Positions 22 through 58,506 are shown, counted from the stretch's first letter. The stretch is 64,000 nt of DNA from Botryllus schlosseri (GCA_051294905.1 CM119372.1:3782001-3846000), one strand, 5' to 3'. Numbers and translations: made by a program. The notes: generated by a model from the letters alone, not told the origin.

Positions 22-313
22 CAGAATTGCTCAAACTATATAGTTAACTAACGGTCAACTAACTACTGTTTTTAGTATAGTTCTAGTTCTAGTTGCGGAT
101 TTGGAAAAATGAGTAGTTCCAGATGCGGATTTTGAAAAGTTGAAAGGTTCTAGTTCTAATTCTAGTTGCCAGTTTTGAAAAATGACTAGTTTTAGTTTCA
201 TAGTTCCGAGTTTTGAGAAGTGAGTAGTTCTAGTTGCGAGTTTTGAAAATTGAGTAGTTCTAGTTCTAGTTCTAGATGCGTATTTTGAAAATCCAGTATT
301 TAGTACAAGCCTG
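22..313. mobile_element. hAT-type MITE with internal (TAGTTC)n-rich repeats
   Basis: Perfect 8-bp direct repeat TTTCGCGC at 14-21 and 314-321. Imperfect termini CAGAATTG.. / ..CAAGCCTG. Internal repeated motif TAGTTCTAGTTGCG..TTTTGAAAA also seen at 38820-38960. Confidence 0.72.
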
Positions 314-881
314 TTTCGCGCGGCGTACTAGATTGCAACTGTCCATCAATTGTTTATGCCGTGTCATTCTCCATTTTGCTCTTTCTGTCCCGGAAAACAG
401 TAATTAGGCGCGAGACAAGCAATGGCGCTCCGCGAGCCCAAATTTGCAGGTTAAGCCAGAGATTCCCCGTCACTTTCATGCAAATTATACCTTAGTACCT
501 CGCGTGGATGTGTTATGAGCCAATCGCTTACTGTTTTAAAACCATTAAATGCACGCAGGTCGCAATTAAAATTGTTAATGACACTCGACGGCACTGGAGG
601 TCGCTGAGCTTATAGACGTAACAGCAATTATTAGCAATGGGCAATTTCAACACCAAAAAACGCGCATTCATGAGAAAATACGAGAACGGCCGCAAACACA
701 TTCAAGTCTGATGGCTTAAGTGCGCAACGTTAAACGATGGCCTAATTATTAATCGTCAATTACCGAGCGATCATAACTCGTTACCCCATTGTCGCCATGA
801 AATTGAGTAGTATTTCGATACCATTACGTGTTCAGTCGCGTGACTGTGCTAATTGAATTATTAAGGAAAGACACGTTAAAA

Positions 882-1046
882 TTTAAAGAGCTTCTTGGAG
901 GTACAGAACTTCAATATACAATTAAATAGTATATTCATATTGAAATGAACCCGAATATTTTCGGCTGACACTCGTCAGGGGTAATCGTCAGCAACTAGTA
1001 GAGAATTGGAAAGAACATTGTATATCAACAATCGTATCACAAAATT
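882..1046 (-). mobile_element. Solo Penelope-type pseudo-LTR unit (~165 bp) carrying a hammerhead ribozyme
   Basis: Near-identical (reverse complement) to 58214-58376, which directly follows a Penelope GIY-YIG C-terminus. Further copies at 1852-2022, 41749-41895, 44726-44893, 45890-45970 and 52975-53130. Confidence 0.75.
949..982 (-). ncRNA. Minimal type I hammerhead ribozyme
   Basis: Minus strand reads ACCC-CUGACGA-G(UGUCAGC)C-GAA-AAUAUU-C-GGGU. Helix I is ACCC/GGGU, core CUGANGA, G10.1-C11.1 pair, GAAA, palindromic helix III AAUAUU, predicted cleavage after UUC. Confidence 0.72.
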
Positions 1047-1489
1047 TAAAAAAATTTAACAAAATTTAAACGAACCACCGTTCTTTCAACTTGATAGATT
1101 TCACATATTTTTAAAAATAATGATCATTCTCTGATTATGCAAGGACTTACTATGAAATAAAACCCGTCAATATTGGTACTGCCGTTATTTCATTGTGATA
1201 TTAGTATTTTTCAAGATTCGGGTATCGATGGTTTCCACATATACTAAAATTGTATCAACACATCTTCTACTATTGCGAAAAGGCCTTGGAATGTACCAAA
1301 TACAGTGCTACAGCTTTTCAAATATATATACAGTTATACACGCATTGGCGAGTGATAGAGTTATGTGGTGAATTTTATTTTGAATGAATGGATAAATTAG
1401 TATATTTTACTGTCGCGAAGAAGCATTGAAATGTACCGAATACAGAATGCTTTTCGAAATACATATACATGCCCTTTTTGTGATAATGT

Positions 1490-1851: not shown

Positions 1852-2022
1852 GAAGACTCTTGGCGGCAGCGAGCTTCAATATACAATTGGCTATATATTC
1901 ATATTGATATAAACCCGAATATTTTAGGCTGACACTCGTCAGTGTAATCGATGATGATGTCGAATCAGCCGAAAATAATCGGGTTTATTTGAGTATGATT
2001 AATATATTATTCAATTGTATAT
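1852..2022. mobile_element. Inverted pair of degenerate Penelope pseudo-LTR/hammerhead units
   Basis: Minus-strand copy with GAAA changed to TAAA (1912-1945), abutting an opposite-orientation degenerate copy (..CAGCCGAAAATAATCGGGTTT, ~1950-2022). Confidence 0.6.
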
Positions 2023-3039
2023 TTTTCTTTACGATGCGAGTATTTGACATAGTATATCTCGCGTACTGGCACGTTGCTACACTCCCCTCCAGACGACGTG
2101 ACATTCTCCTTGCCATCCGATAAAGTAGTTTTATCTGCAGGGTCATGAAGGTGGTTATGTGCCGCTGTCAGATGGATGGAATATAGCCGTACGCTCGGGA
2201 TCAAGTTATGATAACACCGCTCTCGCAAATTGACCGATTGTGCGCGCGCTATAGAGTTTTCGAAATTATCCCCACCGTGATTCATAACTTGACGCCATTT
2301 TACGGGAAAATATTTTTTTCTCGTTAATTACCCCCTTGACTTTCAAATTAGACAAAACAAAATCCCGCACGTCCGGCAATTAGTATTAGCAACAATCATT
2401 GACCATAACCTCACATGCTTAAGAACAGTCGGCGCGTAATTATTGTGAAATTTTGCGGTTTTTATCCCATGGTTTTGTGGGCATTAGGTATAGCCTGACG
2501 CCATCCGCATTGGAAAATGAAGCTTTTCCATTCTGCCAGGTCACAATTACAGAAAAGAATATACCCTATCGGAACAGTCTTTCGTATGTGGTCACGATTT
2601 CTGAAGTATTCGACGACTCCATTATCGGCCGTATACCAGAAGTTATCCAATTCGTAAATAAAACTAATTGAGAGAAAGTACTCGAAACATAACCACAACA
2701 TGCGGCGACTTAGCGCCATTTCGAGGAAGCCAATCATCGCGTCGCAATAATTTAATGAAGCTTTCGCGACCTTATACAAATCCCATAAAGGTGCAATCAT
2801 GATATTATAAAATTACGGACCATTTACAACGTTGAGCAATACCCGAAATGGTAAATACTTTTGATATAATTAACGGGCCGCATATTGACAAGAAAAGCTC
2901 CCATCGTCCGCAGGCCCGCCTTACAAAAACTGCAATTTATGTGTATGTTAGATCACGACATTGGAAAAACTTCATTCGATACAGCTAACAGATAGCGTAT
3001 GTAGTAAAACAAACTTCTGTGCAAGCCAGTAAATCACGG

Positions 3040-41300: not shown

Positions 41301-44300
41301 AGGTTAGAATTGGGCCAAACTTGCTGTGCAGCGTTTTTTTTTCAACCAAAACTAACCTAACAATTTTATAGAATACCCCGTAAACTTTTATAGAAAAATT
41401 ACTTCTGAACAACTCTGCTACGCATGTTACGGAACGCGATGCTGTATATCGCGCAGGTCAATAGGTGACGCGACCCTATTTAACGTCACGAAGCTAATTA
41501 GCACAGCAGCGCCGACGTATTCTACACGAGATTACTACAAGAGAATTTTCTTGAGCCACGCGTTCGGTCGATACTACGGTGACACGCCAATTAGGCTCTA
41601 CCAAACGAACATTTCAATTAGCGCGCCGATGCCCCTGAGGTTTGGTAGCGGTCCATAATTGAAGATGAGGCGGAATTAATATTTTGCACAACGCGGATCA
41701 GAGGATTGATGCCAATTTGAAATCAGTACATTGTGCGCTTTATAGTGAATACGATTGTTGATATACAATGTTCTCTCCAATTCTCAACTAGTTGCTGACG
41801 AGTCCGCTTGTCAAGTGTCAGCCGAAAATATTCGGGTTTATTTCAATGTGAATTGAATATTCTATCCAACTGTGTAGTGTAAGAGTTCGATGCTGCTAGG
41901 CTGGTCCCAATTTCGAATGGGCGAGTGCTTTGGTCTATTTTAAATAGGCCTATGTAAAACCGCACATGATGACATCTCATCAGTATGAATGCTGGGGAAT
42001 TTCAAATACGCAACTTCCATGTTGCACAAAAGAATATAATGCTATTTCTACATCACATTCGCGGTACTTCGGTATCGTTACGACCATACTTATTCCATTG
42101 CAACGCGATACAATTCTGAGCCGGGATGTTTTCGTGTACTACGCTGTTGGTCAAGAGCTCAAGACATACACCTAGGGTTAGTTCGGATATCAATAATTTT
42201 CACTATCCGGATAACGGATATATCCGGATATTTTGGAATTTATCTAACCGGTTAACCGGATAATAACTGCTAAGTGAGACAATCGATTTCATTAGGTCTG
42301 CATGTAAAACGGATCGCAAAATCATTACACAGTGTTATTGTAGAGTACCTTCCTACGCGCGCAGTATGAGCGAATACGAGAAAAACCACGCAAATTTAAT
42401 GTTCACCGCTTCTGCAATGCCCTCTTTATAAAGCACAGATGCATCAATTGTGGGATCCTTTAGCCGGGACCGGAATTTTGTAACAAATAGTCTACGTTCA
42501 TTGAATGCTTTTTCAGCTTCCACAGAAGTGGGCTGAATAGGAAGCAGCGCTTCGTAGAGAGTTAAAAGGTTGGCAGGTCGTACGCCGGAAACTTCAACGG
42601 CTTTACATCCTTTTGACCATCCTTATGTTTAGGTTTGGAGTACTAGAAGGACGACTAGCTGATACTGGAATTGATACCGACATGATACCTCGCTCTAATT
42701 CACGTGATCAGGCACGCAGCCAGCCGAAAATGTAGGGGGATTGAAATAAAATCAGGGGGTTTCGATTTTTTTTCGAATTATTCATCAGGGGAAATTAATT
42801 ATGCTTGCACGCACGCACATTTTTGCGAACATTAGATGTCATTCAGTTTCGCGGTGTCACTCTCAGGATTACTAATTAGAATACACTTAACGGCATATCG
42901 TCAACAAGCCATCTAGAGATAGGAGCCAATGCATGCTGGGTCCGAGATGGTTAGGCAGGCGATTATATCGTTCGTAGGCCTATTGCAGATGCGATTGTGT
43001 AGGTCAACGATAATATCGTGAGCACCAAGCCAATGAAGATGCGATTGTGCTGGCCAGCGATGGAATAGTGTGTACACTGCACATGGCCTATTGCAGATGC
43101 GATTCTTCAATCCAGTGGAACTATCGACTTGTTGTAGACGCGATAAATCAGGCCAGAGACCATAGCCGAGCGCGCGGCAATCAATGACCTAATTTAACGA
43201 TCTTCTCAGCAGGAGATCGCGTCACATTACATTGTGCAATGTGTACAGACGCATCTCGCTAATTGGCAACACGCTTCTCGTTAATAGGCCGCGCCAACAC
43301 TGATTACGACTTATTGAAGCTTACTAAAACGTGTAAAATGCATTAGCAACGATTCTTTATTATCCGGTTAACCGGCAGAAAAATATCCGGATATCAGATA
43401 GTGAAAATACCTGCGGTTAACCGTTTAACCGCTATCCGGATAATCCAACCCTACATACACCCCAACTCGTACTGATTTACGGTAAATATGCATCATTACT
43501 TTTATTTGCATGAAAACCAGCTTGTAATCGTTTTGTTCTTTTGACGCACCTCTCAAATCCCGGTAGCATTCGTAAAAGCCATACTTCAATATCGCAGCCA
43601 ACAATATATTCACACCGCCAAATTCGTTACAAGAGCTTTGATCTGGAGCAAAAGCCGGTAAGTGCGGTCAAATAAATTAGGCGGGATGAATATATTTTCC
43701 GTCGAGATATTATATGCGCGACAGGTGACAAAGAAACGGAACACCCCGCGAAAGGCTTACCGTCAAAGTTGACGTGTCGCAGTATAGCCTGCATGACGGA
43801 CTCGAAAAATCGCTCCACGCCCTGCAACACAAAATCAATCGCGGGTCGATAACGCTCGGTTGTGGTCAGCAAAGAAACACAATTGTACGCGAGTAGGTTT
43901 TGCTGACATGTGCACTGCTTTCTCAGGCGGCTGTGTTTTAGGCTACCCCCACTTCAAGTCGTTGGTAATTTTCCGTTAGTATGCCACTTGCAATTTGGAA
44001 AACGGCCACGCCCAATCACCTGCAACTTGTATGCGACCCATCGGGCGAACCCACTTTTTGCAACTACCTTGTAATGAAGCTGATTCACCCTTTTATGTGG
44101 AAAATGGCCACCTCCGATCGACTGCTGAAAGTTCGCGACGCATCTTTAGGGCCCTTCATTTTCTACTCACGCTAGCATAGAAACTCTCACTCAAGTGATT
44201 CCCAATCGCGGCTCCAAGGTAGCCTTCTTACGGTTCCGATTGACCTCTAAACATGCCACAAAATTATAATAGGCGCCAGTTTTTGGTTGTTGCTATGAAT

Positions 44301-47300
44301 AGTTATAGTCAATTTCTGTATATGAAAGCTAAAATGTGGGATATTAGTTGTGTCTTTTGTGCAATAAGTGCTGGAATGTGTGAAGACTGAAGAGCTGTCA
44401 CATAACGATATTATGTTCTATGTTGCAGTAATGAAATGCATGTTCAGTTTATTTCAATGTATAGCACTCGCCAATCTGCGTCTATCAATGCTAAAATAAA
44501 CGATAAAGAATCTATAGAAGTCTATATGCGATGTGCATTCTTTTGAATTAGCTGTGCATGGAGAGATCCAGAGGTAGGCTGGCTACCTTTAAATTTCGTT
44601 ACAAGTAAGCCTACTCTGCAGTTTGAAATGCGGCCCCGACATCCAACAAGGTTGGGAACCACTGCGGTCTCACTACTTAAAACAAGCCTGGAAATACTCG
44701 AAAATCGTTGACTGGCTATATTTTGGAGACTCTTGGGAGGTAAAGAACTTCAATATACAGTTGAATAGTATATTCAAACGGGAATAAACCCGAATACTTC
44801 GGCTGGCACTGGTCAGTGGTAATCGTCAGCAACTAATAAGAATTATTACCCCTCACGAGTGTCAGCCGAAAATATTCAGTTTCATTTCAATAAAACACAT
44901 TCTTCAATTGCGACCGGCCATACCTTGTCGTGCTGCTGCGAACTGCCTTTCCTTTTGCGCGGTATGTGCATCTCTATCTTGGCCCGCACCAGAGTCATGC
45001 TGGCCAGTACGAGGCAAACGTGCGCGATGCCCTCTTGCATGACGACCGCGGCCACGTCGGAGTTTTGCGACGGGTCGCACGCGGTGTCTGCGGTAGCGAG
45101 AGAGCGTTTTAGCGGTCAAAATCGGCGGGAAAATCGCAGTGATTAGCATACTTGGACAATTAGATAACTCGATTTGTGTTGTATGTCGTTCTAATTAGGT
45201 ACCTATTTCAATTTCTGAGTTTTAGCGGATTCATCATTTCTAATTCTAATGCCTTAATTTTTAAAAGCTCGAAGTTTTCTCGTTGTCATAGTCAGGATTG
45301 CACTGTTGAGGTACCGATTCGATCCAGCACGACGCTGTCCCAGCATTTCTTGGCCAACGTGAATTTCCTGTTCGGCTCCAAGTCCAGAGTGTGATACGCC
45401 CCCATCTGTTGTACAAATTAAATAGATGTACCGACGAGCCATGACCTAAACCTGCCCGTCCCCAGGCCAATATATATCTCGAAATTGCTAAAATAAACTC
45501 GGTTCAACTCTGCAAGACATCAGTAAGTCCGCTTAGCCTTGCAGGAATGGAGGTGTTGACTAAACGAGAGTAGTCACATTGCAACAAGGAAAAAGGATTA
45601 GCCATAGCCACCACATCACTCTTCGGTATTGATTTGCATACAATTCGCCGGGTTGGTCTCGCTGCTCGCTAGGAGCACATTGTGAATTGCAGCATTCATT
45701 GCCGCAACAAAAATTTTGCAAAATCTTGCAGAAAGAGCTGCAATAGCTCGCGGCAAATGCAAGCGGGGTAGCGGTTTCAGACGGCTTAGTTCCGCTCAGT
45801 TTTATCATGAACCACAAGATTGCGGCACGGCAATTAATCAAATACCCGCCTTGCCTAATAACAAGGATAAGAAAACTTGATTGGTGTATTCATATTGAAA
45901 CGAACTCATCATCAACGAGTGAAGAATTCGAAGAGCTTCTCGGAGGTACAGAACTTCAATATACAATTGAGTTGGAAAAAGCATCGTAAATCAATGATCA
46001 TATCACTAAATATGACGTCACCGGCATGAAATTCCAGCAGTCCCTCAAGCTCAATGCATTAATTTGTACTATATTGGAACACACTCTTTTTGTTGGTGCA
46101 AATTTGATTAGCGGATTATAAGGTGCATATCTGGAGCATCTTCAGACAACGCGATGGAATGGTAAAGTAGGTTTATGTTGATGTAGTATTTATGATTCGA
46201 GGCTATTTTCACTTTTACTTACGTTTTTTAAGCAAAACTACTTATTTTTACACTTAGGATTTTGTCGAAAGTAGTTTTGATCACAAATAAAGCAATTCGA
46301 CTCTTCCAGAGTACCCATACTGGAGTGGAGTGGGTATGATGATAGAATACCTCTACTTCAACACAATCTTCTGTTTTTCAGGCAATATTAGGCCCAGAAT
46401 ACTGACTTGTTAACAGGGAGGTTCCGAGTCACAAGTCAACCTCACTTTTATAGTTTTGACTCGAGTCAAGTCGAGTCATTTTCAATTCACCACCGAGTCT
46501 TAGTCAGCGAGCAGCGGGTCGATTCCAAGTCACAGTGTTCACTGTTCAGTTTTGAGTTCAATCCGGTGACACAGTCTTAACAGTTTCTGGTCCTATTTTC
46601 CTAGTATCAGGACTGAAAGACGAAATATCAATTATGTGGTGACTTCACTATTCTTAGAAGCTACAATGAAATGTCTGTCTTGGCCGTCTCAGTCTCGAGT
46701 CATATGACTTAATTCGAGTCATGCACGATGACTTGAACACAAGTCGAGTCAATGCACAAATTGACTGTAGTAGAGTCATTTTACGCATTTGAAAATTTGA
46801 CTCGAGTCAAGTCAAGTCAAGTCACAAAAAAATCGTGAGTCGAGTCATTACAACCCTGCTTTTTAATTACTCGGAAATCAGGACTCCCTCTTGTATTTGA
46901 CAATTAATTTACATCAATACTTCTACTTGAGTACTTTGACAACCTGGGCCGGAATCTCACCTTGACGAACTGGTTTTCGACAATATTCCTGCCCTTGACC
47001 CGGAGCACGCATCCCTTGGAATCAAAATCCAACGTTTTCACAGTGATGGTCAAGGTCGTCCTTACGCGACTGCTGGTGCTGCTGCCCGTGTTGGACTCCG
47101 ATTGAACCTGCGACAACGAAAATGTTGTTATAGACAGACAGACAGACAGACAGACACAGACAGGTTGGTTTACACTTGGCATTCTCGTGTCATGTCTGAG
47201 AGAATGGAATCTGATTCGATATGGAATGAACTTTGATTTTTGTTGCGTTTCTTTCCAAGTCGGAAGTTTGATTCAATTTCAGTAATTCTAATTCTAATCT

Positions 47301-50709: not shown

Positions 50710-53700
50710 TCATGAGAAGGTGTTGATCAATATAATAATATACAAAAATGTAAATCCCACAATGCTGACAACGGACTGGATGGAAAATAAGCTGGTATGA
50801 AACAGGCAAAGGTACCAAATTCCGGCCAGAATTAAACCTGGAAAAGGAAGAAATGGAATTGTGAATTTGAAAAATATAGAATTCAAAGCCACTGACCTAA
50901 TACCGGGAGAAACAGCGACCCTATATGAAGTTCTTCCGCCATCATTTGCAACTGTTGCGAGGCACTTCCTGCCACATTTTCTTGCACATTCACAACGGGG
51001 GATAAAAAGCAGTGAACCACAGGAACTGCATCGCTATCACCATCCTGTTCAATGGAAAAGGTATGCATGAGAAGAGCATCACCTGGAATTTACGGTAGTG
51101 ATTACCAAGGCGATTTTTTTTTTGGACAAAATTGTAGCGTTAGGTGAAATTGCTTACATGATCAAAACGTTTTTGCAACCTGCATTTTGTTTGTAACGCA
51201 GATGTTTGCACTGTCGCGAAACTTATCATTTGACAATTTACATCTTGTAGCCTACTTTATAGTTTATAGGCCTACTGTTTTAGACGACCCATTGTCTGCA
51301 CATTGTGAATCATAAACGGTAAAATGAAACAAATGGCTGACATGGTGTTATGCTCAATGACAACGTCCCGCAATATCCTGAGGCAAGAGTGCGGGTGCGG
51401 GGGGATTGGTTCTTATATCAAGAAGCGCATGATGAAAAATTGTTATGTATGTAGACAATATTGTCAGAATGAAGAAACGCGGTGTGTCACCAACAGTGTA
51501 CACACAACTTCAGCGTTGCCAGCCAGCAACTGCTGCTGTTGAAAGTTCTTTCTCCATTTTTGGCAAGCCACTTAGTAAGTATCCTTCGTTGTGCTACAAC
51601 AAATTTAATTATTTCTACCATAATGCGTGATGTAACTACTGGAATTCTTCATAGGTCCAGATTTCGTTATAATGAATATTTTAATGTAAAAATATGTCAG
51701 TTTTCAAGTCAAAGTTTTTTCTAGACGAACTACTTCGCAAGGACTGACAGTTCCAGTCAGAAATGAAGATAAGTACAATTCTCTGACATTATGTGTGAAA
51801 ACACCCAATTTACATACAAGAGGTCAAAATTTTGTCAAAATCAAGTTGAAGATAAAAAAATACCAAAATTCTGATTTCTTAGGTCAAAATCTTCTGTTTT
51901 TCAGGTTAAAAAACCCACCCTATTGATAAGGAATCGATACCCCAACTCCACTTTCCTAACCAACTTTGAAACAACAAACATACAACAATGCTACACAGTT
52001 ACACGAGTTAAATATTGTCAGTAGTCGACATGATTCATTTTAGCGACTCTTCTTGGACAAGTTATCATGCCAGAATAAACACTGCTTTACAACAATTTGA
52101 CTTGTGAATCTAGCTGCCGTAATGCACTTCAAAAACGTGGGATGTCACTCTTTAGTATCTTTTCCACTGTCTGGCTATCTGTCACAAGCAGTGGTTCTTT
52201 TTTCACGTTTTTTTCACATTTCACCTTCTTGCGCAAAAAATCTTAGCCGATGTGCGTATAGCTTCTAGATTTACCCTCCAACATGAATAATGGTGCTCTA
52301 AATGCGACAAAGAAAATGACTGGCTGCCAAAATTCTTTTCTGAATTTCACCACATCATATTCACAGCGCAGTGCCCGTTTAATATGTACCGCACCTGATT
52401 TATTACAAGATTAAGTTGCCGCAAAGTTCTAGTGCCGTCTCTCAGAACTTGACCCCGGTATATCAATCTGTACCGACTTTGAGTTTCGACTGGCAGACAG
52501 CGGCTACAACAAAAGACAATATTACAATTTTGTTGAATATTCCTACATGTATTGTGGTCTTACTTTCTGAACGATTCCAATGTTTCGTCAGGGTTTGCTT
52601 CCACAGTGGTAGATGATTCATCCATATATTTCAAACGGATTTTTATAGTGGCCGAGTCAGGTTCATCAACTTGAGACGGTGTGACTGAAGAACTTGCTTG
52701 TGTGTGTCTCTGCCTCAAAGTGTCCCCACCGGACTGTTCTTCACGAACGCTAGACGTGGATTCAGTTTCATTCCGTGAATTAAGATCCTCCGGTGTTGCT
52801 GGAAAAGCGCAAAATCAACAAATAATCCTACAATGATAATAATATGAGAGCTGGGTTATTGCAGAATTTGTTACCTTCTGTAGAATCCACATTTGACGAA
52901 GGGACTTCAGCAGTATCAGGAACGGTCGAAGGGTCTGCGTGTTGCCTCGTCCTGATATACACAAGACGATCAGACCACTCTTGGAGGCGAAGAACTTCGT
53001 TATACAATTGGAAATATATTCGTTTGAAACAAACCGCAATTTATTGGCTAACACTCGTCAGGGGTGATCGTCTGAGACTAGTTGAGAATTGGGAAGAAGA
53101 TGGTATATCAACATTTCAACAATCATATCAACAGACATTAGGGCTCTTCAAAAATGACTTTTTTTCTCAAATCGTACTGGCTACTTGATAAAATTGTTAG
53201 GTTACCTAATTTAAGCCTACACACAAAATTTGGTTCAATCCCAGCCAGTAACCGCTTTGCTACAGGAGAAGGTTTCTAGTTATTATATAAAAATAAATAA
53301 TAAAAAATTTGAAAATTTTCTGTTTGGCATGAAAGTGTTAGGCTGTCTATAGAAACGATGCTCACCAAATTTGGTTCAATTCCAACCAGTGGAAGCGGAA
53401 TTATTGCCGTGCAAGAATTTTGATTTGAATAAAATAGTATTTACGGTGACCGATTCTTTGTTTATTTATTATAGTTGTGCTCACCGTAAATACTAATTTA
53501 TTCAAATCAAAATTTTTCGACTGCAATAACTCAGCTTCCACTGGTTGGAATTGAACCAAATTTGGCGAGGATCATTTCTACAGACAGCCTAACACTTCAA
53601 TGGGGTGAACAGAAAATTTTCAAAATTTTTATTATTTATTTTTATATAATAAATAGAAACTTTCTTCTCCTGTAGCAAAGTGGTTACTGGCTGGAATTGA

Positions 53701-54112
53701 ACCAAATTTTGTGTGTAGGCTTAAATAAGGTAACCTAACAATTTTTTCAAGTAGCCAGTACGATTTGAGAAAAAAAGCCATTTTTGAAGAGCCCTAATAG
53801 ACATATTAGGTGATAAGATTGTCAAGATCCAATGTTTTTTCCAATTATATATCCATTTCTGATGTTTACCATGACTGGATTCAGCTGAAAATATTTGAGC
53901 TTGTTTCAACATGGATATATCATTCAATTGTATAAAAATGTGCACTGTAAAGTGTGCAATCATACATACCTATTAGTTTCGTTGGTGGCATAATTCACAT
54001 CATTGACACGCGTTGACAGCCATGATGCAACTACTATGACAATCGCGATCAAAATACCAAATGTCAGTGTAACTTCATCTCCCACACCATCGATGAAATA
54101 AGATTCAGTCAT
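50710..54112 (-). CDS. tmub: Transmembrane and ubiquitin-like domain-containing protein (TMUB1/2-like), ~279 aa
   Basis: Exons 54112-53970, 52951-52875, 52798-52564, 52503-52395, 51044-50897 and 50837-50710; phases consistent. N-terminal IDGVGDEV plus TM, UBL domain (IRLKYMDE..ANPDETL..YRLIYRGQVLRD..TLRQLNL..VVHC), C-terminal IGSLFLP plus two TM segments. Confidence 0.88.
51445..51630 (+). pseudogene. Decayed hAT transposase C-terminal fragment in TMUB intron 4
   Basis: LQRCQPATAAVESSFS resembles the hAT dimerisation motif (PxTSAxVERSFS). Confidence 0.45.
52975..53130 (-). mobile_element. Degenerate solo Penelope pseudo-LTR unit in TMUB intron 1
   Basis: GGAGGCGAAGAACTTC.TTATACAATTG ... ACACTCGTCAGGGGTGATCGTC ... 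GGTATATCAACA; GAAA box lost. Confidence 0.5.
53139..53796. mobile_element. Foldback MITE (658 bp, arms ~310 bp) in TMUB intron 1
   Basis: TAGGGCTCTTCAAAAATG.. / ..CATTTTTGAAGAGCCCTA; the arms stay complementary almost to the centre (~53450-53480). TSD ACAGACAT/ATAGACAT (7/8). Confidence 0.85.
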
Positions 54113-57633: not shown

Positions 57634-57978
57634 ATTCTAGCTATCGCCACTATGATATGTTAAATGCTCTGCAACCACATAGGTTAGAGTTTCCATATGT
57701 CCTCCGTTCGGAGGATTTGACATCCTTTTTTGGGAAATCGGAAACGTCCTCCGAGGACGCGTAAATTTTCTCATTTGTGGGAAATTCGTCTTTCTTTATA
57801 GATTCGACAGCTAGGCTAATGGGCAGGCACAACTAAAAACCGCCACAAATGACGCGCACAACCCGTAAAAAATTTAGAATCAGAAGTAATATGGTAGTCC
57901 TGTAATTTAACTTTTGAGATTTTTAAGAATTGTCCTGCTTTCCGGATCCTAACAGCGGAGCGATCAGAAGCCATAAAC

Positions 57979-58170
57979 TCTGCCATTGGCAAACATCTGT
58001 TGGATAATCCCGCTTGTGCAAAAAATTATCGAGACGACAGATTTCGCGTCATCCGAAGGGGCCGCTCACACTTTCATCTGTGTGCCTTGGAGTCAACCTT
58101 TATCAAGCTGCATCAGCCCAAGCTTTGTCTACAGAAGGAGTTCGTGCACCATCTTAAATTAGTACATTGA
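57979..58170 (+). pseudogene. Penelope-like GIY-YIG endonuclease C-terminal remnant
   Basis: Start-less open frame (57898-58170) reads SAIGKHLLDNPACAKNYRDDRFRVIRRGRSHFHLCALESTFIKLHQPKLCLQKE, the typical SAI..HL...C...F.I.....L..LE..FI....P.L..QKE end of Penelope-like proteins. Confidence 0.8.
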
Positions 58171-58276
58171 ACGCTCTCTTATTCGATATCTCATTCCAAG
58201 CTGGTGACGTCATATTTTGTGATACGATTGTTGATATACAATGTTCTTTCCAATTCTCTACTAGTTGCTGACGATT

Positions 58277-58310
58277 ACCCCTGACGAATGTCACCCGAAA
58301 ATATTCGGGT
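58277..58310 (+). ncRNA. Minimal type I hammerhead ribozyme (10.1-11.1 pair mismatched)
   Basis: ACCC-CUGACGA-A(UGUCACC)C-GAA-AAUAUU-C-GGGU; core intact, but A replaces G10.1. Confidence 0.6.
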
Positions 58311-58506
58311 TCATTTCAATATGAATATACTTTTCAATTGTATATTGGAATTCTGTGCCTCCAGAAGCTCTTTAAACCTAACAAATGTCTACTTATCGGT
58401 TTGTATAGAAACATTTATTGTCTTTAGACAAAATTGCAATTGATGTATAGAATTATATGCCAAGCATAGATTTCACTAAAATACGTCGCCATCCATTTCT
58501 CTTTCG

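What the first reader, a model, noticed from the sequence alone, without database searches (positions are those of the whole stretch)
882..1046. Dispersed family of ribozyme-bearing mini-elements with a 6-nt palindromic helix III and a possible built-in switch
Seen: at least seven ~165-bp copies in 64 kb; the copy at 949-982 (minus strand) has a fully intact core. Three features stand out. Helix III is the self-complementary hexamer AAUAUU rather than the ACGU tetramer I associate with minimal Penelope hammerheads. The CUGACGA box is duplicated 13 nt upstream, and its UGA can extend helix I (UGA/UCA) around a CGAUU bulge. CUGAC-GAGU-GUCAG can form a competing 5-bp hairpin that hides the catalytic box. 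Inference: cleavage probably needs dimerisation and may be conformationally gated, and the family behaves like a non-autonomous retrozyme/SINE-like system mobilised by the Penelope machinery.
Basis: partly seen in the sequence, partly recalled or inferred. Interest (0 to 1): 0.72.

Follow-up and report, generated by a model that had tools for sequence, protein, structure and literature searches.

The report
Truncated Penelope tail with pseudoknotted hammerhead
The "mini-element" is the chopped-off 3' end of an ordinary self-sufficient Penelope-like jumping gene of a sea squirt. It carries that element's known hammerhead self-cutting RNA motif, and the one unusual point is that the motif's second helix is built by pairing with a six-base box just upstream instead of by a hairpin.

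Summary
The sequence features are real, but the reading is only partly right.

**What 882-1046 is.** On the minus strand it is a very young insertion, 100% identical to the last 161 nt of a 2.3-kb autonomous Penelope-like element (PLE). That element has a 711-codon RT plus GIY-YIG ORF.
- It is not a discrete 165-bp unit. Copies share one 3' end and have variable 5' ends.
- Genomic counts fall from 2436 to 664 to 132 at 150, 300 and 1200 nt from the 3' end.
- The eight window copies measure 38-420 bp, and one runs into the ORF.

**The hammerhead.**
- The core, helix I and a palindromic helix III are intact and covary across families.
- The 6-nt palindrome and dimer dependence are already published for PLE hammerheads.
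- The "duplicated CUGACGA box" is really the partner of loop II. GCUGAC pairs with GUCAGC, and all six pairs covary in 14 family representatives from this genome and other assemblies.
- Stem II is therefore one base pair plus a 6-bp pseudoknot.
- The proposed switch hairpin and the helix I extension show no covariation.

**Expression.** RNA reads show passenger transcription and no ends at the cleavage site.

**Precedent and repeats.** One published hammerhead has a 1-bp stem II with a 6-bp pseudoknot (Perreault 2011). I found no description of this for PLEs. The scan has reported this same family and pseudoknot many times on other pieces of this genome.

The parts
882..1046 (-). 5'-truncated insertion (161-165 bp) of the 3' UTR of PLE family A
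   Evidence: 100% identical to nt 2175-2335 of the full-length element in L031. At least 40 genomic copies are 98-100% identical.
987..992 (-). Upstream box GCUGAC, the 5' strand of the pseudoknot that stands in for helix II (positions 10.2-10.7)
   Evidence: Complementary to 964-969. Five of 6 pairs show two-sided changes in 63 copies, and 6 of 6 in 14 family representatives.
979..982 (-). Helix I, 5' strand ACCC
   Evidence: Pairs with 949-952. It covaries (ACCC/GGGU, GCUA/UAGC, ACUG/CAGU, GCGA/UCGC).
972..978 (-). Catalytic box CUGACGA (C3 to A9)
   Evidence: Read directly. C3-G8 is replaced by U3-A8, never by a single change, in 5 of 14 families.
963..971 (-). G10.1, one linker nucleotide, loop GUCAGC (964-969), then C11.1
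   Evidence: G10.1-C11.1 is invariant in the sampled copies. The search patterns required both letters in the 63-copy set, so that invariance is by selection there. The loop pairs with the box.
959..962 (-). GAAA (G12 to A15.1)
   Evidence: Read directly.
954..959 (-). Helix III hexamer AAUAUU, self-complementary, so usable only between two copies
   Evidence: The palindrome is kept in 90.5% of cells with covariation (AAUAUU, AAGCUU, AUCGAU, AGGCCU).
952..953 (-). Predicted cleavage site, between C17 (953) and G1.1 (952)
   Evidence: Inferred from the hammerhead consensus. No RNA read ends pile up at the equivalent site (L031 217/216).
949..952 (-). Helix I, 3' strand GGGU
1041..1050 (-). TTTAAATTTT at the 5' junction, also present at 878-887. 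A possible target-site duplication or microhomology, overlapping both element ends.
   Evidence: Read directly. The insertion site is a run of TTAAATTTT-like repeats.
57955..58373 (+). A longer copy of the same tail (420 bp, 86% identity) that includes the last 73 codons of the PLE ORF
   Evidence: blastn and tblastn (81% amino-acid identity, E 3e-34).
1858..2023 (.). Old copy (1858-1950, minus strand, 85% identity, G12 changed to U) with an inverted fragment (1965-2023, plus strand)
44731..44892 (.). Head-to-head pair of tail fragments (44731-44844 minus, 44845-44892 plus)
41749..41861 (+). Decayed tail copy (88% identity), core destroyed
45931..46033 (-). Tail copy with an internal deletion that removes the hammerhead
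   Evidence: query 2153-2217 and 2297-2334.
52979..53113 (-). Decayed tail copy (80% identity)
53802..53934 (+). Decayed tail copy (75% identity)

Best explanation
**What it is.** Window 882-1046 (minus strand) is a recent, dead-on-arrival insertion made by target-primed reverse transcription that stopped early. It comprises the last 161-165 nt, all 3' UTR, of an autonomous 2.3-kb Penelope-like retrotransposon.

**The hammerhead it carries.** The tail holds the element's type I minimal hammerhead.
- Helix I is 4 bp (ACCC/GGGU).
- Stem II is only G10.1-C11.1.
- The 7-nt loop of stem II pairs over 6 bp with a box 4 nt upstream of helix I (GCUGAC with GUCAGC). I infer that this pseudoknot stacks on G10.1-C11.1 and does the job of helix II, while tying helices I and II together.
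- Helix III is the palindrome AAUAUU. It cannot close on itself, so it needs a second copy.

**How it would work in full-length elements.** Arranged as direct tandems, a hammerhead lies between successive ORFs. Two of them could pair through helix III and cut after C17, releasing unit-length RNA. This is the published PLE model.

**This copy.** The solitary window copy has no partner in cis. It is most likely an inert passenger of host transcription.

**Shown versus inferred.**
- Shown: identity as a PLE tail, and covariation of helix I, the box-loop helix, helix III and C3-G8.
- Inferred: coaxial stacking, dimer-dependent cleavage, and the biological role.
For: **The repeat is a PLE tail.**
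- Copies share one 3' end and have variable 5' ends, and two loci share at least 1550 bp upstream.
- L031 holds a full element. Its 711-codon ORF hits RVT_1 at 7e-9, has a KPDKG motif, and has a C-terminal VVYEYRC...GYVGRT motif with GIY-YIG at E 0.016. The stop codon lies 105 nt before the hammerhead.
- 3920 homologues carry DUF8422, RVT_1 and HTH_animal, with faint GIY-YIG.
- Genomic counts are 2436, 664 and 132 at 150, 300 and 1200 nt from the 3' end.
- PLE-typical inverted head-to-head copies lack the last 31-38 bp. This matches PMC8557442 and PMC11167929.

**The structure covaries.**
- In 63 copies, sampled in genome order or by loop sequence, the box-loop helix has 5 of 6 pairs with two-sided changes. 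The score for the whole model, which also includes helix I and G10.1-C11.1, is 0.407 against 0.213 for shuffles (0 of 500), and at most 0.119 when slid.
- In 14 family representatives, the box-loop helix has 6 of 6 pairs with two-sided changes and 94% of cells paired. Helix I has 4 of 4. C3-G8 reads CG in 9 and UA in 5, with no single changes.
- Box and loop pairs seen: GCUGAC/GUCAGC, ACUAAC/GUUAGU, ACUGGC/GCCAGU, UCUGGC/GCCAGA, CGUGCC/GGCACG and UGUGCC/GGCACA. In other assemblies: UCUGAC/GUCAGA, UCAAGG/CCUUGA, AGAUGG/CCAUCU and CUUGAU/AUCAAG.
- The helix III palindrome covaries.

**Tandem arrangement.** Family B forms a perfect direct tandem of period 2778 bp, with a hammerhead between ORFs.

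**Precedent.** A hammerhead with a 1-bp stem II and a 6-bp pseudoknot cleaves fast and depends on the pseudoknot (PMC3088659, Fig. 4).
Against: - No cleavage was measured.
- RNA reads cross the predicted site continuously, with no pile-up of ends.
- Rfam's hammerhead models do not match.
- Some multi-copy families break the rule. GGUGCC/GAAACC pairs at only 4 of 6 positions. The CCAGAC/CCAGAA family has its only complementary stretch about 40 nt upstream.
- I chose the 14 representatives after seeing them.
- Published work found that hammerhead mutants do not affect PLE insertion in vitro (PMC11167929), so the motif's role is open.
- Copies within a family are near-identical, so the independent evidence is the number of families (about 12), not the number of copies.
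Confidence: 0.85

Rival explanations
1. These are discrete, roughly 165-bp non-autonomous retrozyme or SINE-like elements, mobilised in trans by Penelope enzymes. Their ribozyme is gated by a competing hairpin and a duplicated catalytic box.
For: - Short tails are by far the commonest form: 2436 copies reach 150 nt, against 132 that reach 1200 nt.
- In family A the hairpin CUGAC-GAGU-GUCAG exists. Together with helix I it is about as stable as the box-loop stem (-8.4 against -7.4 kcal/mol).
- Four copies with unrelated flanks share the window copy's 5' end.
Against: - The 5' ends are variable and continue into the PLE ORF.
- Only 6 exact matches exist to the window copy's 5' junction, and two of those are longer copies.
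- I saw no tandem 165-bp arrays.
- There is no back-joint at the cleavage site in RNA.
- The hairpin pairs no better than shuffles (407 of 500 and 109 of 500). It is absent in families C, E and F and in L096 and L098.
- The UGA/UCA extension pairs in 45% of cells, the same as shuffles.
Confidence: 0.04
2. The box-loop helix is real, but it is not part of an active ribozyme. It would be a structural element of the 3' UTR used for something else, for example recognition by the PLE reverse transcriptase. The hammerhead-like core would then be tolerated or parasitic sequence.
For: - There is no sign of cleavage in RNA reads.
- Published work shows that hammerhead catalytic mutants do not change PLE insertion in vitro, and found no RNA-seq ends at the site (PMC11167929).
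- PLE hammerheads cleave poorly in vitro (PMC4209133).
Against: - The core is kept across families that are only 42-64% identical in protein.
- C3-G8 changes only as the compensated pair U3-A8. That is a constraint specific to the hammerhead fold.
- Helix I, the A15.1-U16.1 ends of the palindrome and H17 are all kept.
- The loop sits exactly between G10.1 and C11.1.
Confidence: 0.08
3. In family A only, the hairpin between CUGAC and GUCAG, together with a second hairpin CCGAA/UUCGG, is an inactive monomer fold. It keeps solitary or nascent copies from cutting until a partner is present. This would be a family-specific gate, not a conserved one.
For: The nested minimum-energy fold of the family A tail contains both hairpins. 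Alternative inactive monomer folds are known for dimer-type hammerheads (PMC4209133).
Against: There is no covariation, and the feature is lost in other young multi-copy families. The complementarity follows automatically, because the box (NCUGRC) resembles the core (CUGAN) and the loop must match the box.
Confidence: 0.12

Closest known systems
Minimal type I hammerheads of Penelope-like elements (Cervera and de la Pena 2014, PMC4209133; Lunse et al. 2017, cited but not readable here)
   Same: - It lies in the PLE 3' region (pLTR).
- Helix I is short, 4-5 bp.
- The G10.1-C11.1 pair is kept.
- Helix III is palindromic and implies dimers.
- U3-A8 core variants occur.
- Most copies are solitary motifs in truncated PLEs, or pairs on opposite strands.
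- There are thousands of copies per genome.
   Different: Published PLE hammerheads have a 6-8 bp hairpin as helix II. Here only 9 nt lie between A9 and G12, and the helix II partner strand sits upstream of helix I. The published descriptor requires the hairpin, and the Rfam models do not match.
[quoted passage not shown] 2011, PMC3088659, Fig. 4)
   Same: Stem II is reduced to one pair. It is extended by a 6-bp pseudoknot between the strand continuing from stem II and nucleotides at the far end of stem I. In that RNA, activity depended on the pseudoknot and was restored by compensatory mutation.
   Different: - That case is a single bacterial or phage-type sequence of type II topology.
- Its pseudoknot uses the 3' tail after strand 10.x and loop I.
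- Here the topology is type I. The strand before 11.1 pairs with a box 5' of helix I, helix III is dimer-type, and the arrangement is the rule for a whole PLE clade.
Non-circular hammerhead permutations SGC, CSG and GCS (Eckert et al. 2023, PMC10085705)
   Same: It is a hammerhead whose helices cannot be drawn without crossing lines.
   Different: Their scheme keeps block C (CUGANGA plus its stem II strand) unbroken and reorders the blocks. Here the block order stays C-G-S (type I), and only the stem II 5' strand is displaced.
Metazoan retrozymes (Cervera and de la Pena 2020, PMC7229834)
   Same: They are short, non-coding, carry a hammerhead and are abundant in invertebrate genomes.
   Different: Per the title and abstract of that paper, retrozymes are non-autonomous elements with classical type I hammerheads, expressed as small circular RNAs. 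That they occur as tandem repeats is my own recollection; I did not open the paper. Here the copies are dispersed truncations of a coding PLE, and no circular joints were seen.

Membership tests
Hammerhead ribozyme (type I) | Conserved core CUGANGA ... GAAA, with the A15.1-U16.1 pair and H17 at the cleavage site | tested here: met
   All are present at 978-953 on the minus strand. C3-G8 covaries to U3-A8 across families.
Hammerhead ribozyme (type I) | Helix I formed by the 5' and 3' flanks | tested here: met
   ACCC/GGGU. Four of 4 pairs show two-sided changes in 14 families.
Hammerhead ribozyme (type I) | Helix II as a local stem-loop between A9 and G12 | tested here: not met
   Only G10.1-C11.1 can form locally. 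The remaining 6 bp come from a box upstream of helix I, and that pseudoknot is supported by covariation.
Hammerhead ribozyme (type I) | Helix III | tested here: met
   A 6-nt palindrome with no loop, usable only between two copies. It covaries.
Hammerhead ribozyme (type I) | A match to the Rfam hammerhead covariance models | tested here: not met
   No hit at the gathering threshold in the window, nor at E up to 10 in 600-1400.
Hammerhead ribozyme (type I) | Site-specific self-cleavage | not testable with these tools
   RNA reads show no ends at the site, but they come mostly from solitary copies inside other transcripts.
Penelope-like element (canonical, endonuclease-positive) | A single ORF with a reverse transcriptase domain | tested here: met
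   RVT_1 at 7e-9. Homologues carry DUF8422, RVT_1 and HTH_animal.
Penelope-like element (canonical, endonuclease-positive) | A C-terminal GIY-YIG endonuclease | tested here: inconclusive
   GIY-YIG scores E 0.016, 16 bits, below the Pfam cut-off. The motif VVYEYRCHCDCGYVGRT is visible, and the family is faint in homologues.
Penelope-like element (canonical, endonuclease-positive) | 5' truncation, partial tandems (pLTR), adjacent inverted truncated copies, and an optional 30-40 bp tail | tested here: met
   Inverted copies lack the last 31-38 bp.
Metazoan retrozyme | A non-coding unit of fixed length in tandem repeats, each with a hammerhead, expressed as circular RNA | tested here: not met
   The 5' ends are variable and continue into an ORF, and the copies I inspected are single or in inverted pairs. 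There is no back-joint at the cleavage site.
SINE | A discrete 5' end with an internal pol III promoter | tested here: not met
   There is no fixed 5' end. Promoter boxes were not searched.
Pseudoknotted hammerhead with 1-bp stem II (Perreault 2011) | A one-pair stem II extended by a pseudoknot of about 6 bp to the far end of stem I | tested here: met
   The topology differs, being type I here and type II there.

The most novel reading that the evidence does not exclude
A whole clade of canonical Penelope-like elements uses a hammerhead whose stem II is a single pair extended by a long-range 6-bp pseudoknot. This is found here in a sea squirt, in marine metagenome scaffolds and in at least one other NCBI assembly. 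The published PLE hammerhead descriptor requires a hairpin helix II, and the Rfam models do not match, so roughly ten thousand copies in this genome alone may go unrecognised. PLE lineages reported as lacking canonical hammerheads but having a bare "HHR core" (PMC8557442) might carry the same kind.
Probability: 0.55. Interest if true: 0.6.

Novelty: new variant of a known kind. Interest (0 to 1): 0.42.

Why it matters
**As a mobile element it is ordinary.** Truncated PLE tails with hammerheads are textbook.

**Why the structure matters to ribozyme and transposon specialists.**
- It shows, with natural covariation across about a dozen families, that a hammerhead can do without a hairpin helix II if a pseudoknot supplies it.
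- The published PLE hammerhead descriptor requires the hairpin, and Rfam does not match, so hammerhead counts may be too low.
- It gives a compact natural scaffold in which one helix both completes the core and ties helices I and II together.

Tried and rejected
- **Rfam** at the gathering and E-value thresholds found no hammerhead.
- **An alternative register** with the upstream CUGACGA as the catalytic box was rejected by reading. ACCC would then fall inside helix II, and no helix I remains.
- **A discrete short subfamily** starting at TAAATTTTGTGATACG has only 6 matches.
- **RNA evidence for cleavage or circles** was absent. The bulk run X24 shows equal depth in both read directions, so strand cannot be assigned from it.
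- **Cross-species loci without information:**
  - L095 and L099 end before the motif.
  - L102 has a frameshifted ORF running off the locus.
  - L101 has a mutated core (CUGUUGA) and only a 5-bp box.
  - L100 has GCAAA and a poor helix I.
- **Literature not reachable.** Lunse et al. 2017 (PMC5785218) and the supplement of PMC8557442 are not held. I therefore could not check whether pseudoknotted PLE hammerheads are drawn there.
- **L094 was left out of the formal count** because its spacing differs by one nucleotide on each side.

Full report
**1. Observation**

The minus strand of 949-992 reads as follows:
- box GCUGAC, linker GAUU, helix I strand ACCC
- core CUGACGA, then G, then U
- loop GUCAGC, then C, then GAAA
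- AUAUU, then C, then GGGU

The hammerhead core (CUGANGA, GAAA, A15.1...U16.1, C17) is intact. AAUAUU is self-complementary. A second CUGACGA starts 13 nt upstream. CUGAC-GAGU-GUCAG can form a hairpin of -5.4 kcal/mol.

The repeat is real.
- A 32-mer from it has 4 matches at 3 or fewer mismatches, against none in shuffles.
- blastn finds eight loci in the window.
- They are not uniform 165-bp units. Their lengths run from 38 to 420 bp and their identities from 75 to 100%.
- Only the copy at 885-1045 keeps every core position.
- Rfam's hammerhead models match nothing here, even at E up to 10.

**2. What the repeat is**

In the whole genome (495.5 Mb, an animal; earlier notes call it a sea squirt) the 165-bp query has at least 40 copies at 98-100% identity.

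- All copies share the 3' end (...gaagctcttt, then 0-3 A). Their 5' ends differ, and two loci share at least 1550 bp upstream.
- Locus L031 holds a full element of about 2.33 kb.
  - Its 711-codon ORF hits RVT_1 at 7e-9 and has a KPDKG motif.
  - It has a C-terminal GIY-YIG-like VVYEYRCHCDCGYVGRT motif. Pfam GIY-YIG scores E 0.016, below the cut-off.
  - The stop codon is 105 nt before the hammerhead.
  - The element is preceded by an inverted 703-bp copy of its own 3' part.
- The ORF has 3920 homologues at E of 1e-10 or better, carrying DUF8422, RVT_1 and HTH_animal.
- Exact 24-mers at 150, 300 and 1200 nt from the 3' end occur 2436, 664 and 132 times. This is a smooth 5'-truncation gradient.
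- Inverted partner copies lack the last 31-38 bp. This matches the optional 30-40 bp "tail" of PLEs (PMC8557442), which was explained by internal initiation of reverse transcription (PMC11167929).
- In the window itself, 57955-58373 continues into the last 73 codons of the ORF.
- Only 6 genomic sites share the window copy's 5' junction.

The "mini-element" is therefore a truncated tail of an autonomous Penelope-like element. It is not a retrozyme or a SINE. The window copy is 100% identical to the full-length element over 161 nt, so it is very young. It is flanked by TTTAAATTTT on both sides, overlapping the element ends.

**3. The ribozyme's architecture**

The motif CUGANGAG-N7-CGAAA occurs 9085 times in the genome, against 24 for the reversed control. 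The variant UUGANAAG-N7-CGAAA occurs 692 times, against 57.

Listing the matches together with their upstream 15 nt shows several families. In each, the six loop nucleotides are complementary to six nucleotides starting 14 nt before the core.

| Source | Box | Loop | Core |
|---|---|---|---|
| This genome, family A | GCUGAC | GUCAGC | CUGACGA |
| This genome, family B | ACUAAC | GUUAGU | CUGAUGA |
| This genome | ACUGAC | GUCAGU | CUGAUGA |
| This genome, family C | ACUGGC | GCCAGU | CUGAAGA |
| This genome | UCUGGC | GCCAGA | CUGAAGA |
| This genome | CGUGCC | GGCACG | UUGAUAA |
| This genome | UGUGCC | GGCACA | UUGAUAA |
| L094 (other assembly) | UCUGAC | GUCAGA | CUGAAGA |
| L096 (other assembly) | UCAAGG | CCUUGA | UUGAAAA |
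| L097 (other assembly) | UCUGAC | GUCAGA | UUGACAA |
| L098 (other assembly) | AGAUGG | CCAUCU | UUGACAA |
| L100 (other assembly) | CUUGAU | AUCAAG | CUGAUGA |

The other-assembly rows come from PLEs whose ORFs are 42-64% identical to this one.

Formal counts:

| Test | Set | Result |
|---|---|---|
| Box-loop helix | 63 distinct copies, taken in genome order or by loop sequence | 5 of 6 pairs with two-sided changes |
| Whole model (box-loop, helix I, G10.1-C11.1) | same 63 copies | covariation 0.407 against 0.213 for shuffles (0 of 500), at most 0.119 when slid |
| Box-loop helix | 14 family representatives | 6 of 6 pairs, 94% of cells paired |
| Helix I | 14 representatives | 4 of 4 pairs |
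| C3-G8 | 14 representatives | CG in 9, UA in 5, no single changes |
| Whole model | 14 representatives | covariation 0.817 against 0.229 for shuffles |
| Helix III hexamer as a palindrome | 14 representatives | 90.5% of cells paired, with covariation |

I picked the 14 representatives after inspection, which is a caveat. The 63-copy set does not have that bias.

The competing hairpin falls to 3 bp or nothing in other young families. Its presence in family A follows from the box resembling the core.

**4. How it most likely works**

- *Shown by covariation:* helix I, the box-loop helix, the palindrome and the C3-G8 pair are all under selection. That set of constraints is specific to a folded hammerhead.
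- *Inferred from geometry:* the loop's 3' end abuts C11.1 with no spacer. The 6-bp helix should therefore stack on G10.1-C11.1 and act as helix II.
  - The single linker nucleotide between G10.1 and the loop would cross the deep groove of a 6-bp helix, as loop 1 does in classical H-type pseudoknots. This rests on my own knowledge and was not tested.
  - The 4-nt linker from the box to helix I ties the far ends of helices I and II together. That is the role of the tertiary contact in fast hammerheads.
- *Helix III:* it has no loop and needs a second copy.
- *Tandem arrangement:* family B forms perfect direct tandems of 2778 bp. A hammerhead sits 184 nt after each stop codon and 36 nt before the next open frame. 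This is the arrangement in which two hammerheads of one transcript could pair and release unit-length RNA, as in the published model (PMC4209133).

**5. Expression**

- One bulk and two single-cell RNA runs of the same species cover the tail at depths of about 200-1000 (both read directions summed). They cover the ORF at under 10.
- In the bulk run the two read directions are about equal.
- 62-96% of the laid reads run on into unrelated flanks.
- No place shows a pile-up of read starts or ends, including the predicted site.
- This is passenger transcription of many solitary copies. It neither shows nor excludes cleavage of tandem transcripts.
- The same negative result is published for an Anolis PLE, where hammerhead mutants also did not affect insertion in vitro (PMC11167929).

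**6. Comparison with what is known**

Already described for PLE hammerheads (PMC4209133):
- the PLE context
- a short helix I
- the G10.1-C11.1 pair
- a palindromic helix III, including 6-nt forms
- dimer dependence
- U3-A8 cores
- solitary motifs and pairs on opposite strands

What differs is helix II. Published PLE hammerheads have a 6-8 bp hairpin there.

- The non-circular permutations of Eckert et al. (PMC10085705) keep block C unbroken, so they do not include this layout.
- The nearest precedent is in Perreault et al. 2011 (PMC3088659). About 40% of hammerheads use a pseudoknot between stems I and II. [quoted passage not shown]
- The present case is that solution in type I, dimer-type form, and as the rule for a PLE clade.
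- I found no description of it for PLEs in the papers I could search. Lunse et al. 2017 could not be read.

**7. Verdict**

- The element is ordinary.
- The helix II pseudoknot is a new variant of a known kind.
- This scan has already reported it repeatedly on other pieces of this genome. My independent tests agree with those notes. They add the Perreault precedent, which lowers the novelty those notes claimed.

Noticed in passing
L111 (G000:C1:22033500-22041500): Family B PLE forms a perfect direct tandem array. The period is 2778 bp and the units are 100% identical. Each has an 853-codon open frame that is 59% identical to the family A ORF. A hammerhead lies between successive frames.
   Followed up: partly
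G000 genome-wide; L103, L104, L110: PLE hammerhead families with a U3-A8 core (UUGANAA): 692 motif hits against 57 for the control. Their box and loop pairs (CGUGCC/GGCACG, UGUGCC/GGCACA) have no similarity to the core.
   Followed up: partly
L105, L106 (G000:C1:19976476-19976630 and 18929307-18929461): A multi-copy family with the core UUGAAAA and loop CCAGAC or CCAGAA has no complementary box at -14. The only complementary stretch (UCUGG) lies about 40 nt upstream, beyond a small CUAC/GUAG hairpin. Helix I and helix III are also unclear.
   Followed up: no
G000:C1:1187432-1187705 and at least 5 similar pairs: A multi-copy family with box GGUGCC and loop GAAACC pairs at only 4 of 6 positions. 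In at least six of its listed occurrences it lies about 240-280 bp from an inverted partner with loop GGCAUA. This is an exception to the box-loop rule.
   Followed up: no
L002-L030; L031 2479-3181: Many family A copies are preceded, at 0-1300 bp, by an inverted copy that ends 31-38 bp short of the element's 3' end. This looks like the PLE "tail" signature.
   Followed up: partly
L031 100-2600, runs X24, X22, X23: A-to-G is the commonest kind of difference between RNA reads and the reference (8-10 of about 20-30 sites per run). At least one of these sites (188) is also in the contigs of run X9 (recorded as RNA by guess only), which suggests a copy variant rather than editing. Several "opposite strands" joints cluster at 167-246.
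   Followed up: no
window 1041-1075 (minus strand): The young copy landed in a short run of TTAAATTTT-like repeats. The same 10-mer, TTTAAATTTT, is found at both junctions.
   Followed up: partly
L096 1140 and 3981: A marine-metagenome PLE has the same pseudoknotted U3-A8 hammerhead both 61 nt before its ORF and 255 nt after its stop. This is a pLTR arrangement on a single scaffold.
   Followed up: partly
run X15: A run labelled as a different organism (organism B) holds 84% of the sampled words of the family A element.
   Followed up: no
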